DNA of 64,000 nt from Selaginella moellendorffii (lineage: Eukaryota > Plantae > Lycopodiophyta), in contig NW_003314346.1 in assembly GCF_000143415.4 (NCBI RefSeq), positions 1 to 64,000 on the forward strand, in the 5' to 3' direction. The translations under genes and the position numbers were made by a program. The notes beneath the pieces are model-generated. The model saw nothing but the letters and a program-made list of their open reading frames with translations, searched no databases and was not told where the DNA came from. Shown in pieces: positions 8,910-53,003 of this stretch. The stretch's first letter is position 1; every line of letters begins with the position of its first letter.

Positions 8910-8985
8910 GGGGTGAAAGCCCAAAGCGTGCGTCTCCCAGGGGGGGGGGGCTGCAGGGGGTTCCAAAAGTATAGTAGGGATAGTG
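8910..8985 (+). promoter_or_regulatory. Shared ~76-bp LTR promoter module ending TATAGTAGGGATAGTG
   Basis: Same module in LTRs of families A, B and C and at 52927-53003. Confidence 0.75.
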
Positions 8986-9733
8986 AGGTCCAGGAACCAG
9001 TTTTGAAGGGACTCTCCAGTTGGGCTTCCAAGCCGACTTGAGGTTGGGACTGGGACCGAGGGGCCTTGGGTGGGAGTGAGCATGGACTTGGCTGGTGCCG
9101 GAGGGGCCATCCAAGGAAGTGCTCAAGAGCAGCTCCCACTCCCGAAAGGGAAACCGATTGCAGTGCTCCCGGCTCATGTGGAGTGGTGCCCCACTTGAGT
9201 ACCATGCGGCTCATTGGTCCTCGCCCTTCCTAGGGGCTTGGGCCTTCCTTCGGGATGGAAGTGGGGGGCGAGAGGTACCCATACCGGGCCGCTAGGCCAC
9301 GGTGTTTCGCCCCGGCGTCCCGAAGCAAGCGTTGCACTCAAGACTTGGGATTTAGAGGGTCCCGTGATCAAGTCTTGTGGTACCAAGGGATGTTAGGAAC
9401 CTGGAAGCTTGGTGTGCTTGGCTGCTTGTGCTTGCGGGGAGTGTAGCCGAACCTTAAGTCCAGTCTAACCCGGGGAGGGGGATTGGGAGTGATTTGGGAA
9501 TCCATGGAAGGATGGCTAACACTCCGTTGCTCGTGCAGTGAGTAGCTGAAACCAAGTAGGAGCTGGTACCATAGGCGAGAACCTTGGCGAGGGAACTTAG
9601 CAAAAGCCAAGGCAGTGTTGGACGGATAGGCGAGGTAAGCTGGCAAAGTGGAAAGGAAAAATTTGTGGCTTACAATTTGGTATCGGAGCCTTCTCCTCAG
9701 TTCTAGCGAAGGATAGAGGCGGATTGCTGGGAG

Positions 9734-12700
9734 ATGGCAAGGGCAGGGCGTAAGCGAACCCAGGCGGAGACAGAACCTCCGCCAGAGCTGGAGCCTCCGG
9801 TCGAACAAGAGGCTATGGATGAGGAATCCTTGCATGAGGAGGACTCTAGTGAGGAAACTTCCAAATAGGAGTCCGGTGGCGAGGTTCGGTCGTCCAAGGC
9901 TCGATTGGACGTTCTAGAAGGTCAATTGGCGCAGACCAATGCCCTGCTGGAGACTCTCGTACGCAAGCTAAAGCGTGATGAGAAACGGAAGAAAAGGCGA
10001 AAGACTGCGGATGCTGGCAGCGCAGAAGGTGCGGACCCTTCGGCAGGGACTGAGGCAAAACCAGACAAGGTCGAACAGACCGAAGTGGAATCAGTCCCTC
10101 AGGCAGTTCCCAAGTACAAACCAAAGCCCCCACCGGTGTTCAAGGGAGTGAACGACTATAAGGTTGTGGAGGATTGGTTTTACGATATGGAGGACTACTT
10201 CCGAGCGTTACGGTTACCGAGCTCGGAGAAGGTCCCATGTGCAAAACCATACTTGGCAGATAATGCCAAGTCTTGGTGGAGAACAACGGAGGCCAACGAA
10301 GGACCGGTGGCCACCTGGGACATGATGAAGGCGAGGATCCGCGCGACATACGTTCCTCCGAATGCCACTCTGCATCTGAGAGATGAGCTGAGTAGGCTGA
10401 AGCAGACTGGAACCATCCAGGAATATGTGAATGGGTTCATGGCAAAGAGGATACTTGTCACGGACATGGGGGATATGGATGCGTTCCATGCCTTTATATC
10501 AGGTTTGCAAACCTGGGCTCGCGGTGAGGTGATGCGCTGGAACCCGACCAACTACAAGGAAGCGTTGGATGCGGCCATCAAGGTGCATTTCAACGATAAC
10601 CTGCGAAAGGGGAACACGACGGGGTCGGGATCCACGTTTCACAAAGGGGCCAAACCGAGGGGAACATATAGCAGGGGGAAATTCAAGAAGAGTTTCTCTA
10701 AGAATGAGTCCTCGGGATTTCGGAAAGGCAAATCCGGTGGCCAGCGAGCAAGTACGTGGGGGAGTCAAGCGAAAAGAGACAAACCCACGGATAAGAAGGT
10801 CAAGTCATATAGCAGCGTGGGAAACAACGTATGCTATAACTGCGGTGAAGCGGGACACTTTTCGAGGGAATGTCCCTACCCGAAGAAGGCCAGAGCCAAT
10901 ATGGCCATCAAGTCGGGCGAAGTCCAAAATGAGGTATGTGATCCAGTCCCTGACTCAAAGTTACTCATTACACGAGCAACTTTGGTAGAGAGTCGTTCGC
11001 GACATCTACTAGCCCTCCGAGGGAAGCTCGGAGGTAGCTTTGTTAAGATCCTTATTGACACGGGTGCTTCGGATAATTTTGTGGCTGCAGACATAGTCCG
11101 GCAAGCCGGACTAACGGTGCAGCGGCTAGGCGAACCAAGGACTATAGAGTTTGTTCAAGGTAGCCAAAGCACCGATGAGGTACTTCGACAAGCGAAAGTC
11201 GAAGTAGGGACATGGAAGGTAGACATGGATTTCACCGTGTTGGACATGGCGGGATTTGACGTGATCTTCGGAATGGATTGGTTCAATCGGTTCGTGGTAG
11301 CCCTACATGGACAAGGTAGGAACCTTGTGGTACTGGCAAATGCCCAAGGAAGAAGATCTAGGGTGGAAGCCCAGGATCTAAAGGTAGGGCAAAGCAAGGC
11401 CAAAGAATCTTGCTTAAACCTGGTGTCCACGAGAGGACAACTCACTAAAGGAACTAAGGCAGCCTTTTTGTGCTTACTCTCGGTGAAGAGTGACAAAAAG
11501 ACAAGAACGGAAGAAGTGCCTTTAGTGATCCAGCGGGTGTTGGACCAATTCCAGGATACCATGCCGGAGGAGCTACCGGCGGGGCTGCCCCCAGCACGAC
11601 CGATAGAACATAAGATTGAGCTGGTCGAGGGTGCTGAGGCAGTGGTTCGTCCCCCTTATCGTTTGAACGAAAAAGAACTCAAGGAGCTCAAGTGCCAACT
11701 AGAGGAGTTGGTGGACAAAGGGTATGTTAGGTTGAGCAAGTCGCCGTATGGGGCGCCGGTGTTATTTGTGAAAAAGAAAGATGGATCTATGCGCATGTGC
11801 ATAGACTACCGCTTGCTCAACAAGTATACAAAGAAGAACAAGTACCCTTTGCCAAGGATTGAGGACCTGTTCGATAGGTTGGGAAAGGCAAAATACTTCT
11901 CGAGGATTGACCTAAGGTCAGGATACTACCAGATCAGGGTAGCCGAGGAAGATGTCGAGAAGACAACCTGTCGAACGAGGTATGGGAGCTTTGAGTTTCT
12001 AGTGATGCCCTTCGGGCTATGTAATGCGCCGGCAACGTTTTCGGCGCTAATGAACCACGTCTTTGTACCCTATCTGGATCACTTCGTGGTCGTCTATATC
12101 GACGACATCCTGATCTATAGCGAGACGCTAGAAGAGCATGCCGAACACTTGGCGAAGGTGTTTGAGAAACTAAGGGAACACAAGCTGTATGCTAAAGAGA
12201 GCAAATGTGACTTTGCTCAACAAGAGGTAAAGTTTCTCGGGCATGTGGTGGGCCAGGACGGGCTCAAGGTGGACCCGGAGAAGGTCCAAGCGATCCAGGA
12301 ATGGGAGCGACCATCGAATGTACATGAGTTGAGGGCGTTCCTGGGGCTATGCAACTACTATCGAAAGTTTATCAGACACTATTCAAGAGTAGCCCTGCCC
12401 TTAACGGACCAAACAGGAAAAGGGAAGATGGTATGGACAGCAGAATGCGAGGCGGCATTCGTCCACCTCAAAGGGAAGTTGAGAAAGGCTCCCGTATTGG
12501 CATTGCCAGACTTTGGTAAGGACTTTGAGGTAGAAATGGATGCTTCGGACTTTGCGTTGGGCGCAGTTCTGAAGCAAGACAACCATCCGGTAGCGTTCTT
12601 CTCGAAGAAGCTGGACAAGGCTCAACGGAAGTGGCCTGCCCATGAGAAGGAATTGTTTGCGGTAGTCAAGGCACTCAAGGAGTGGCGACACTACCTTGGG

Positions 12701-52507: not shown

Positions 52508-52539
52508 AAACCCTACCCTACCCTAAACCCTAAACCCTA
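52508..52539 (+). repeat. Short interstitial plant telomeric repeat / telo-boxes
   Basis: AAACCCTACCCTACCCTAAACCCTAAACCCTA. Confidence 0.8.
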
Positions 52540-52926
52540 CACTTGCACATGGCATAGTGTTGCGTTCCATACATTGAGCCCGTGTGCCATCTTTAGAGCA
52601 CGTGGAATAACACGTGGCGATATAAGTTACTACGAAAAAAAACAACTCAAAAACATCCAACTTTAGCCGAAATATGAGTTGGCAACACTACATTTACTAC
52701 CATGACACCAAGCTCGAAATATGTCACGTGACTCTTACCTTGAAAAACCACTAAAAACGGCACATGTTACATGGCATGAACAGTGTGCCACGTGTCATCC
52801 GCTCCTAGGAGTCGTCTCGTGACACTCGAAAAAAAAAAGTAAGAAAAAATGACCACTTTTTCATTGTTGATGTTGCAGAAGTCGCAGCACTTCCAGATTC
52901 TAAGCCCGAACACTAATACATGCTGT

Positions 52927-53003
52927 GGGGTGAAAGCCCAAAGCGTGTGTCTCCCAGGGGGGGGGGGGCTGTGGGGGGTTCCAAAAGTATAGTAGGGATA
53001 GTG
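52927..53003 (+). promoter_or_regulatory. Putative RNA polymerase I (rDNA-type) core promoter; predicted +1 at 52994
   Basis: TATAGTAGGG at 52988-52997 matches the plant rDNA initiation consensus TATA(G)TAGGG and lies downstream of 5S and subrepeat arrays. Confidence 0.55.

What the first reader, a model, noticed from the sequence alone, without database searches (positions are those of the whole stretch)
8910..53003. Three LTR families share a module that looks like the rDNA (Pol I) core promoter
Seen: GGGGTGAAAGCCCAAAGCGT..G-run..TTCCAAAWGTATAGTAGGGATAGTG occurs in LTR A (TATAGTAGGG at 8970, 15354), LTR B (16176, 25286, 25986, 31393, 37527, 38171, 44616), LTR C (variant TATAGTAGAG, 50036-50045) and once outside any recognisable LTR (52988). 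LTRs A and B show no other obvious similarity. Conservation runs from about -67 and stops at about +10 relative to the A of TAGGG. Known: TATA(G)TAGGG is the plant Pol I initiation consensus, and the Arabidopsis core promoter spans roughly -55 to +6. A Pol II TATA box would put the start ~30 nt further downstream, where these LTRs diverge. Some Galadriel-type chromoviruses are associated with rDNA. Inference: these retrotransposons may have captured or mimic the host rDNA promoter and be transcribed by Pol I.
Basis: partly seen in the sequence, partly recalled or inferred. Interest (0 to 1): 0.92.

Follow-up and report, generated by a model that had tools for sequence, protein, structure and literature searches.

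The report
Retrotransposon LTRs carrying the rDNA promoter
Several families of jumping genes in this plant (probably a spikemoss) carry, in the middle of their end repeats, a close copy of the start signal of the plant's own large ribosomal RNA genes. The one "stray" copy in the window is that ribosomal start signal itself, and nothing yet shows that the ribosomal RNA polymerase reads the jumping genes.

Summary
TATAGTAGGG and its upstream module occur at all 11 stated sites, far above chance.

New here: the copy "outside any LTR" (52988) is the promoter of a real rDNA unit.
- It lies 1.9 kb downstream of a full 5S rRNA gene, behind spacer subrepeats.
- It sits at the head of a GC-rich 5' ETS.
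- This unit is high-copy in independent DNA runs.
- RNA-type runs hold none of the spacer upstream of 52994, but contigs run from 53016/53027 to 54387.

The module spans about -100 to +13, with its core at -67 to +13. It lies in sense orientation, mid-LTR, in three chromovirus-type families that all use a tRNA-Met primer site. The A and B polyproteins are only 43% identical. Each family's core is closer to the rDNA copy than to the other families, which points to capture from rDNA.

Transcription of the elements by Pol I is not shown. No module-bearing RNA contig appeared. Pol I transcripts are uncapped and poorly translated. Plant Pol I promoters can also be used, inefficiently, by Pol II.

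The scan already found this module on other pieces of this genome, and those follow-ups reached the same verdict. I found no published case. I class it as a new variant of promoter-capturing LTR elements such as Cassandra.

The parts
52893..53006 (+). rDNA gene promoter module: core 52927-53006, TATAGTAGGG at 52988-52997, presumed +1 A at 52994
   Evidence: Position between spacer and ETS. Blastn and alignment to the LTR copies. DNA contigs of X4 and X3 match, with only a 1-nt G-run length difference. RNA-type runs hold no sampled words upstream of 52994.
50996..51114 (+). 5S rRNA gene, same strand as the promoter (5S-linked L-type rDNA unit)
   Evidence: Rfam RF00001, 92.4 bits, model 1-120/120. 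A T-run follows the gene. It lies in the same high-depth contigs as the spacer.
51115..52892 (+). Spacer between the 5S gene and the promoter (IGS2), with three subrepeat arrays (51396-51599, 51611-51979, 52034-52386)
   Evidence: Tandem Repeats Finder. X4 and X3 contigs at word depth about 130-180.
52994..54644 (+). [quoted passage not shown]
   Evidence: RNA-type contigs cover 53027-54387 (X15), and 53016-53745 and 53719-53998 (X17). In X3 the rDNA leaves the window sequence after 54644.
54645..64000 (.). Transposon inserted into the ETS of this unit (DUF7869 ORF 55334-58381 on the minus strand). It runs past the window end.
   Evidence: X3 loose end at 54644 and a separate contig starting at 54645. 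Pfam PF25273.
8541..16058 (+). Element A, a chromovirus. LTRs 8541-9674 and 14924-16058 (99.6% identical). Primer site TGGTATCGGAGCC at 9678. gag-pol ORF 9905-13621. Integrase frame broken. Chromodomain ORF 14102-14506.
8876..8988 (+). Module in the A 5' LTR (+1 equivalent 8976; 435 nt of LTR before it, 699 nt after)
15259..15372 (+). Module in the A 3' LTR (+1 equivalent 15360)
38150..45237 (-). Element B1, a chromovirus. 5' LTR 44316-45237, ending GCGCTACA, then TT and primer site TGGTATTAGAG. ORFs 41017-44193 and 39409-40947 (chromodomain). 3' LTR 38150-38785, cut off 25 nt after the start motif by the next element.
44610..44718 (-). Module in the B1 5' LTR (+1 equivalent 44619; 618 nt before it, 304 nt after)
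38161..38274 (-). Module in the truncated B1 3' LTR (+1 equivalent 38174)
24680..25823 (+). Long B2-type LTR. Module at 25193-25301 (+1 equivalent 25292). Primer site TGGTATCAGAGC at 25826.
30869..38149 (-). Non-coding B2-type element E1 with long LTRs (about 30869-32011 and 36986-38149, 96.9% identical). Modules with +1 equivalents at 31396 and 37530.
25851..26597 (-). B1-type LTR fragment with the module (+1 equivalent 25989)
16058..16744 (-). B1-type LTR fragment with the module (+1 equivalent 16179)
48894..50650 (-). LTR C, a 5' LTR related to LTR A (63% identity). It abuts the rDNA spacer. Primer site TGGTATCGGAGCC from 48890 downwards. The right-hand boundary is approximate.
50030..50139 (-). 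Diverged module in LTR C (TATAGTAGAG, +1 equivalent 50039). Clear similarity only from -67.

Best explanation
The module is the gene promoter of the host's large (35S/45S) rRNA genes, about -100 to +13 around the plant Pol I start motif TATAGTA(+1)GGG. The copy at 52988 is that promoter in place, in an rDNA unit of the 5S-linked type: 5S gene, subrepeated spacer, promoter, 5' ETS. A transposon later inserted into this unit's ETS.

Three chromovirus-type Ty3/gypsy LTR families (A, B with subtypes B1 and B2, and C) each carry a captured copy. It lies in sense orientation in the middle of the LTR, where U3 meets R.

I infer that the copy serves as the core promoter and start site of these LTRs, because all families keep it exactly up to about +13 and then become family-specific. 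Which polymerase reads it is open. I rate ordinary Pol II use of the captured motif (alone or beside some Pol I use) as more likely than Pol I as the main polymerase.

Shown: the identity of the module with the rDNA promoter, and its position and orientation in the LTRs. Inferred: capture from rDNA, and promoter function in the LTRs. Unshown: the polymerase.

My sub-probabilities:
- module is a copy of the rDNA promoter: about 0.9
- rDNA is the source: about 0.8
- it acts as the LTR start signal: about 0.6
- Pol I is a significant reader: about 0.2
For: (1) rDNA context of the 52988 copy.
- A complete 5S gene lies at 50996-51114 on the same strand.
- Typical spacer subrepeats follow, then a GC-rich ETS-like stretch.
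- A scan note places ITS1 of the 45S unit 3.6 kb beyond the window end (a lead, not tested).

(2) High copy number. Runs of only about 3 million letters of contigs hold about 70% of the stretch's sampled words. Contigs of X4 and X3 cover the 5S gene, spacer, module and ETS at word depth 80-230 with few differences.

(3) Transcription boundary.
- The shares give the same absolute word count for the RNA-type runs on 52560-54520 and on 52994-54520 (about 117, 115 and 107 words for X15, X17 and X19). So they hold none of the roughly 42 words upstream of 52994.
- Their contigs start at 53016 and 53027 and run to 54387.

(4) Motif. TATAGTAGGG is used as the 45S start sequence in Avena (PMC5407837). 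The plant consensus TATATA(A/G)GGG and the Arabidopsis core of -55/-33 to +6 are given in PMC7928365.

(5) LTR anatomy. The module is in sense orientation and mid-LTR in every family. LTR lengths before | after the start motif are A 435|699, B1 618|304, B2 about 612|532 and C about 600|1146 nt. All have tRNA-Met primer sites.

(6) The A and B polyproteins are 43% identical, and their LTRs share nothing but the module.

(7) Star pattern in -67..+13. Identity to the rDNA copy is 93.8% for A, 90.0% for B and 75% for C. Between families it is 86.2% (A-B), 72.5% (A-C) and 70% (B-C).

(8) The 3' edge is common to all families at about +13. The 5' edge differs: about -100 in A and B, -67 in C and in a further high-depth context seen in reads.

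(9) Pol II can use plant rRNA gene promoters inefficiently, and uncapped Pol I transcripts translate poorly (PMC7928365).
Against: No 5' end of any LTR transcript was mapped here.

The two RNA-type runs laid contain no contig carrying an LTR-type module. The depth over the module bin is fully explained by the ETS contigs. So these elements look silent in those samples, and promoter function is inferred from anatomy only.

Within family B the whole -340..+10 part of the LTR is conserved, so the module is not singled out by conservation inside the family.

The contig starts at +23 and +34 in the ETS cannot tell a start at +1 from a start about 25 nt after the TATA-like motif.

That 18S follows downstream rests on a scan note, because the window ends inside the inserted transposon.
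Confidence: 0.6

Rival explanations
1. One reading: the elements are transcribed by RNA polymerase I from the captured promoter, starting at the A of TAGGG. This would make them Pol I-driven LTR retrotransposons. Uncapped genomic RNA would be made in the nucleolus, and the proteins would be supplied from other transcripts or in trans.
For: - The copy covers the whole region that suffices for Pol I initiation in Arabidopsis (-55/-33 to +6, PMC7928365) and more.
- It is 90-94% identical to the host promoter in young elements (LTR pairs 99.6-99.7% identical).
- Similarity ends just past +1 in all families.
- Many copies in the window are non-coding elements that need only a template RNA.
- R2 elements are a precedent for retroelements transcribed by Pol I (PMC10946416).
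Against: - No RNA evidence was found here.
- Elements A and B1 encode gag-pol, and Pol I transcripts lack a cap and translate poorly (PMC7928365).
- Other follow-ups in this scan report near-silent copies, and a spliced RNA starting at a module copy, which points to Pol II (s1-430196 and s1-405199; leads, not tested here).
- How a Pol I transcript would end inside the 3' LTR is unexplained.
Confidence: 0.2
2. Passive passenger. Elements that live in and around the rDNA spacer picked up spacer sequence by read-through, template switching or gene conversion. The module has no role in the elements.
For: - The LTR nest abuts the rDNA spacer (LTR C ends at about 50650).
- Scan notes describe repeated LTR insertions in spacers of this genome (leads).
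- No module-bearing RNA was seen in the runs laid.
- The review PMC10946416 expects most rDNA-derived modules in transposons to be neutral.
Against: - Orientation and placement are the same in three families whose proteins are 43% identical.
- All families share a sharp 3' edge at about +13, which is the functional edge of a plant Pol I promoter (PMC7928365).
- The module is intact in very young copies and across B subtypes that differ by 10-15% elsewhere.
- No other piece of the spacer or ETS is shared beyond simple hexamer repeats.
Confidence: 0.12
3. Reverse direction: the rDNA promoter of this lineage was itself taken from an LTR (a solo-LTR fragment put to use), and the LTR families inherited the module.
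For: Pol I promoters evolve fast, and transposon fragments are common in spacers (PMC10946416). Short GAGTCC-type hexamer runs occur both at ETS +35..+85 and in U3 of A and C.
Against: - The start motif TATAGTAGGG is shared with distant plants such as Avena (PMC5407837), so it is old in rDNA.
- No LTR sequence flanks the module in the spacer.
- The rDNA copy sits at the centre of the star pattern.
- The families differ in their 5' edges.
- Vertical inheritance of 86% identity in non-coding DNA is hard to reconcile with 43% protein identity.
Confidence: 0.05
4. The module works in the elements not as a start signal but as a binding platform for Pol I factors or nucleolar chromatin. It might steer the DNA or the integration complex towards rDNA, or shelter copies from silencing.
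For: The elements cluster next to rDNA here, and scan notes say so elsewhere. Chromoviruses of the Galadriel type are known to associate with rDNA (PMC10946416).
Against: No data bear on it. A binding platform would not need one fixed orientation, or an edge just past +1. Chromodomains already offer a targeting mechanism.
Confidence: 0.03

Closest known systems
Cassandra TRIMs and the proposed 'TRIMp3' group (Helenus, Ajax): LTR elements with a captured Pol III promoter
   Same: A host RNA-gene promoter sits inside both LTRs in sense orientation, so transcription starting in the 5' LTR yields a terminally redundant RNA. The promoter copy stays close to the host gene's version (PMC10886601, PMC10946416).
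   Different: - Here the captured piece is the upstream Pol I promoter of the large rRNA genes, not an internal Pol III promoter with part of the 5S or tRNA gene.
- The carriers include full-size chromoviruses with gag-pol (7 kb), not only tiny non-coding elements.
- Use of the captured promoter is shown for Cassandra but not here.
Plant 35S/45S rRNA gene promoters (Arabidopsis, Nicotiana, grasses)
   Same: The start motif is TATAGTAGGG (Avena, PMC5407837; consensus TATATA(A/G)GGG). The functional core lies between about -55 and +6 (PMC7928365). The position is behind spacer subrepeats and ahead of the ETS.
   Different: Upstream of the start motif the sequence is lineage-specific (GGGGTGAAAGCCCAAAGCGT and a G-run of 11-13). 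The unit is of the 5S-linked type.
R1/R2 and other rDNA-resident retroelements
   Same: They are retroelements tied to rDNA, and R2 depends on Pol I transcription (PMC10946416, PMC8789037).
   Different: R2 has no promoter of its own and is co-transcribed with the 28S gene it sits in. The elements here carry a portable copy of the promoter and lie outside the genes.
Pokey (Daphnia piggyBac) with spacer-derived repeats; spacer-derived satellites in plants
   Same: rDNA spacer sequence has been taken up by mobile or amplified DNA (PMC10946416, PMC8724763).
   Different: Those cases involve spacer subrepeats in a DNA transposon or a satellite. They do not involve the gene promoter placed at the U3/R junction of LTRs.

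Membership tests
Host 35S/45S rDNA gene promoter (the 52988 copy) | Lies in the intergenic spacer, upstream of a transcribed ETS that leads to 18S | tested here: inconclusive
   The 5S gene, the spacer subrepeats and a transcribed ETS are shown. 18S is not in the window, because a transposon interrupts the ETS at 54645. ITS1 at 3.6 kb past the window end is known only from a scan note.
Host 35S/45S rDNA gene promoter (the 52988 copy) | Belongs to the high-copy, homogenised rDNA unit | tested here: met
   Small runs hold about 70% of the sampled words. X4 and X3 contigs lie at depth 80-230 with few differences.
Host 35S/45S rDNA gene promoter (the 52988 copy) | Plant Pol I start motif TATA(T/G)TA(A/G)GGG at the transcription boundary | tested here: met
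   The motif is at 52988-52997. RNA-type runs hold nothing upstream of 52994 and have contigs from 53016/53027. Motif sources: PMC5407837 and PMC7928365. The exact +1 is not resolved by contigs.
Host 35S/45S rDNA gene promoter (the 52988 copy) | Initiation by RNA polymerase I | not testable with these tools
   This needs inhibitor, ChIP or in vitro data.
Promoter-capturing LTR retrotransposons (Cassandra / TRIMp3 kind) | A host RNA-gene promoter copy in both LTRs, in sense orientation | tested here: met
   Both LTRs of A, B1 and E1 carry the module in the element's orientation.
Promoter-capturing LTR retrotransposons (Cassandra / TRIMp3 kind) | The captured promoter is an internal Pol III promoter (5S or tRNA) | tested here: not met
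   The module matches the upstream promoter of the large rRNA genes, not the 5S gene. The 5S gene matches LTR C only by a 14-nt word. These elements are therefore not Cassandra members.
Promoter-capturing LTR retrotransposons (Cassandra / TRIMp3 kind) | Short non-coding element (TRIM, under about 1.3 kb) | tested here: not met
   A is 7.5 kb and B1 is 7.1 kb, both with gag-pol. E1 is 7.3 kb and non-coding.
Promoter-capturing LTR retrotransposons (Cassandra / TRIMp3 kind) | Transcripts start at the captured promoter | not tested
No module-bearing RNA contig was seen there.
Chromoviruses (Ty3/gypsy with chromodomain) | gag, protease, RT, RNase H and integrase in Ty3 order, plus a C-terminal chromodomain | tested here: met
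   Pfam for A and B1, including Chromo PF00385 in B1. A has a chromodomain-like ORF at 14102-14506 (read by eye, not run through Pfam).
Galadriel clade of chromoviruses | Phylogenetic placement of RT/integrase within Galadriel | not tested

The most novel reading that the evidence does not exclude
These are the first LTR retrotransposons with a Pol I promoter (an 'LTRp1' class beside the canonical Pol II type and the Pol III type of Cassandra). RNA polymerase I would start at the captured rDNA promoter in the 5' LTR and make uncapped genomic RNA in or near the nucleolus for full-size chromoviruses and their non-coding dependants. The copies would keep tracking the host promoter as it evolves.
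Probability: 0.17. Interest if true: 0.9.

Novelty: new variant of a known kind. Interest (0 to 1): 0.62.

Why it matters
Known LTR elements use Pol II. The known exceptions, Cassandra and its kin, borrowed Pol III promoters and are tiny. A portable copy of the Pol I promoter in several families of full-size chromoviruses would be a third way for retroelements to borrow host transcription signals.

It offers a natural experiment on several questions:
- how specific plant Pol I promoters really are
- whether Pol II can live off them
- whether hundreds of dispersed promoter copies compete for Pol I factors or seed nucleolar associations
- how parasite and host promoter co-evolve

Even if only Pol II uses the copies, repeated capture of the same 80-110 nt by unrelated families shows that this short piece is a self-sufficient start signal. 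The finding is easy to test at the bench, because each family has its own sequence from +14 onward.

Tried and rejected
1. LTR B ending about 25 nt after the start motif. At first I read it this way, which would have ruled out a downstream Pol II start and suggested self-priming through a hairpin. Searches showed this was wrong. The 3' LTR of B1 is cut off by the next element, and the intact 5' LTR runs 304 nt further to a normal tRNA-Met primer site. I dropped the idea.

2. Module in other collections. I scanned metagenome contigs twice and viral contigs once. Only chance 18-24 nt matches turned up, so no relatives were found.

3. Other copies or RNA contigs via exact protein look-up. Three ORF versions were not on record.

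4. Protein search with the B1 gag region.

5. Canonical poly(A) signals in the LTR parts after the module. None were found in any family or in the ETS. This is uninformative, since plant signals are loose.

6. Conservation inside family B as a sign of selection on the module. The whole 3' half of U3 is conserved, so the test does not single out the module.

7. Weak Rfam microRNA hits in the spacer. These are palindromic subrepeats far below threshold, and I disregarded them.

8. Species name. Run ids and organism names were coded, so I could not name the species myself. "Selaginella moellendorffii" comes from other follow-ups of this scan. It fits the 5S-linked unit and the Penelope-like elements mentioned in scan notes and in PMC12477314.

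
Full report
**1. The observation**

A search for TATAGTAGGG with up to one mismatch gives 18 matches where 1.92 are expected, and no shuffle reaches that number.

Extracting each site in its own orientation shows the whole module every time: GGGGTGAAAGCCCAAAGCGT, a run of 11-13 G, TTCCAAA(A/T)G, then TATAGTAGGGATAGTG.

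Blastn between the LTR types and the stretch around 52988 finds one shared block of about 110 nt and nothing else between A and B. In the spacer copy this block is 52893-53006, about -100 to +13 if the A of TAGGG at 52994 is +1.

Identity by segment:
- -67..+13: 90-94% between the A, B and spacer copies
- -100..-68: 61-67%
- from +14: chance level

In family C similarity starts only at -67.

**2. What the carriers are**

Self-comparison, Pfam and boundary reading give this map.

- **Element A (8541-16058, +).** It has 1135-nt LTRs that are 99.6% identical and a primer site TGGTATCGGAGCC. It carries a gag-protease-RT-RNase H-integrase ORF whose integrase part is broken by frame changes, and a chromodomain-like ORF.
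- **Element B1 (38150-45237, -).** This is a chromovirus with a Pfam chromodomain.
- **B2-type LTRs.** Long LTRs of about 1150 nt flank non-coding elements such as E1 (30869-38149).
- **LTR C (about 48894-50650, -).** It is a 63%-identical relative of LTR A, with its own tRNA-Met primer site.

I first took LTR B to end 25 nt after the start motif. That was an error. The B1 3' LTR is cut off by element E1, and the intact 5' LTR runs to 44316, followed by TT and TGGTATTAGAG.

So the module lies mid-LTR in every family. LTR length before | after the +1 equivalent:

| Family | Before | After |
|---|---|---|
| A | 435 nt | 699 nt |
| B1 | 618 nt | 304 nt |
| B2 | about 612 nt | 532 nt |
| C | about 600 nt | 1146 nt |

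The module is always in the element's sense orientation. The A and B1 polyproteins are 43% identical, so these are distinct chromovirus lineages.

**3. The "stray" copy is the rDNA promoter itself**

*Sequence context.* Rfam finds a complete 5S rRNA gene at 50996-51114 on the plus strand (92.4 bits). Behind it come a T-run, an AT-rich stretch and three arrays of subrepeats. Then comes the module, then a GC-rich sequence with internal repeats. That is the layout of a 5S-linked (L-type) rDNA unit: 5S, spacer, promoter, ETS.

*Public runs.* Three lines of read evidence support this.

First, runs of only about 3 million letters of contigs hold about 70% of the sampled words of 52560-54520. Contigs of X4, and of X3 (a near-identical "organism B"), cover the 5S gene, spacer, module and ETS at word depth 80-230 with few differences. 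In the module the only difference is one G in the G-run. The window copy therefore equals the high-copy rDNA version.

Second, the RNA-type runs hold the same absolute number of sampled words on 52560-54520 as on 52994-54520: 0.58 x 202 = 0.73 x 160 = 117 for X15, and likewise 115 for X17 and 107 for X19. They hold none of the roughly 42 words upstream of 52994.

Third, their contigs start at 53016 (X17) and 53027 (X15) and reach 54387.

Contigs cannot fix a 5' end. A start at +1 and a start about 25 nt after the TATA-like motif both fit. But the boundary between silent spacer and transcribed ETS falls at the module.

*Window end.* The true rDNA leaves the window sequence after 54644, where a transposon with a DUF7869 ORF is inserted. 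18S is not in the window. A scan note places ITS1 3.6 kb beyond its end (a lead, not tested).

*Literature on the motif.* TATAGTAGGG is used as the 45S start sequence in Avena (PMC5407837). The plant consensus TATATA(A/G)GGG and the Arabidopsis core of -55/-33 to +6 are summarised in PMC7928365.

**4. Direction of transfer**

In -67..+13 each family is closer to the rDNA copy than to the other families:
- to rDNA: A 93.8%, B 90.0%, C 75%
- between families: A-B 86.2%, A-C 72.5%, B-C 70%

The rDNA copy is the hub of a star. Further points favour capture from rDNA:
- The start motif is shared with distant plants, so it is old in rDNA.
- No LTR sequence flanks the module in the spacer.
- The 5' edge differs among carriers. 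It is about -100 in A and B, and -67 in C. It is also -67 in a further high-depth context seen in reads, where GAGTCC-type repeats and 27 other letters join the module exactly at 52927.
- The 3' edge is the same everywhere.

I conclude that the LTR families took the module from rDNA, probably more than once. The reverse direction is unlikely.

**5. How it most likely works**

*Promoter role.* The common 3' edge at about +13 coincides with the downstream limit of a plant Pol I promoter (3' boundary between -6 and +6 in Arabidopsis, PMC7928365). After it each family has its own sequence, as expected if R begins there. Together with the fixed orientation, the mid-LTR position, and intactness in very young copies, this makes a role as the LTR's start signal the best inference. 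It is not shown.

*RNA evidence.* In the two RNA-type runs laid, the depth over the module bin is fully accounted for by the ETS contigs. Inside family B the whole -340..+10 region is conserved, so conservation does not single out the module.

*Which polymerase.*

Against Pol I as the main reader:
- A and B1 encode proteins.
- Pol I transcripts lack a cap and translate poorly.
- Plant rRNA gene promoters are documented to be used, inefficiently, by Pol II, with splicing of the products (PMC7928365).

Other follow-ups of this scan report near-silent copies, and a spliced RNA starting at a module copy. I did not test these.

For some Pol I use:
- The copy is complete and close to the host promoter.
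- Many non-coding carriers need only a template RNA.

I put Pol I as a significant reader at about 0.2.

**6. Comparison with what is known, and novelty**

The closest known systems are Cassandra and the proposed TRIMp3 group. These are LTR elements with a captured 5S or tRNA Pol III promoter in their LTRs (PMC10886601).

A 2024 review of rDNA-transposon relations lists 5S-promoter elements, a 28S-derived SINE and Pokey's spacer repeats. It lists no transposon with the promoter of the large rRNA genes (PMC10946416). My other literature searches found none either.

The elements here fail two defining features of Cassandra: a Pol III promoter, and TRIM size. They are not members of that group. 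They are a new variant of the same kind of event.

The same module was already noted on many other pieces of this genome by this scan. Several follow-ups reached the same verdict: real and undescribed, with the polymerase unshown.

What this report adds:
- the in-window demonstration that the stray copy is the promoter of a 5S-linked unit with a transcription boundary at the module
- the star pattern centred on the rDNA copy
- the presence of the module in two full-size chromovirus lineages only 43% identical in protein
- the corrected LTR anatomy

Noticed in passing
window 54645-64000: A large transposon is inserted in the 5' ETS of this rDNA unit. It has a 1015-aa ORF with DUF7869 (55334-58381, minus strand) and further ORFs with intron-like breaks (59467-63124). 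It contains a 100-N assembly gap at 59340-59439. The true rDNA continues differently after 54644 in the reads.
   Followed up: partly
window 25851-38149: Tandem arrangement LTR-internal-LTR-internal-LTR of the non-coding B-type element (internal copies 26594-30870 and 32012-36985), as expected from unequal recombination between LTRs.
   Followed up: partly
window 8541 and 16058: The two flanks of element A are pieces of B-type LTRs in opposite orientation. There is no target-site duplication. This suggests recombination between two A copies rather than a simple insertion.
   Followed up: partly
window 8609-8890, 50115-50635 and 53030-53075: Arrays with 6- and 12-nt periods of GAGTCC/GGGTCC/GAATCC-type units fill U3 of LTR A and LTR C just upstream of the module. 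A short run of the same hexamers lies at ETS +35..+85, downstream of the rDNA promoter.
   Followed up: partly
window 49936-49960 (minus strand): The part of LTR C after the module contains a 14-nt exact match (CTGGGAAGTCCAAG), with loose flanking similarity, to the 3' half of the 5S rRNA gene (E = 0.02). This is weak, but scan notes speak of 5S-bearing Cassandra LTRs in this genome.
   Followed up: partly
window 52516-52540: A short run of plant telomere-type repeats (CCCTAAA-like units) lies inside the rDNA spacer.
   Followed up: no
reads laid on window 50381/50451 to 52927: A high-depth contig in two DNA runs joins GAGTCC-type repeats and 27 other letters to the module exactly at -67. A second contig type keeps only the upstream half of the module (a loose end behind 52960). 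The module therefore exists in further contexts not present in this window, either more LTR families or spacer subrepeats.
   Followed up: no
window 20718 (minus strand): A further tRNA-Met-type primer site (TGGTATCGGAGC) follows a different LTR end (CAACACA). It belongs to an LTR family that was not examined.
   Followed up: no
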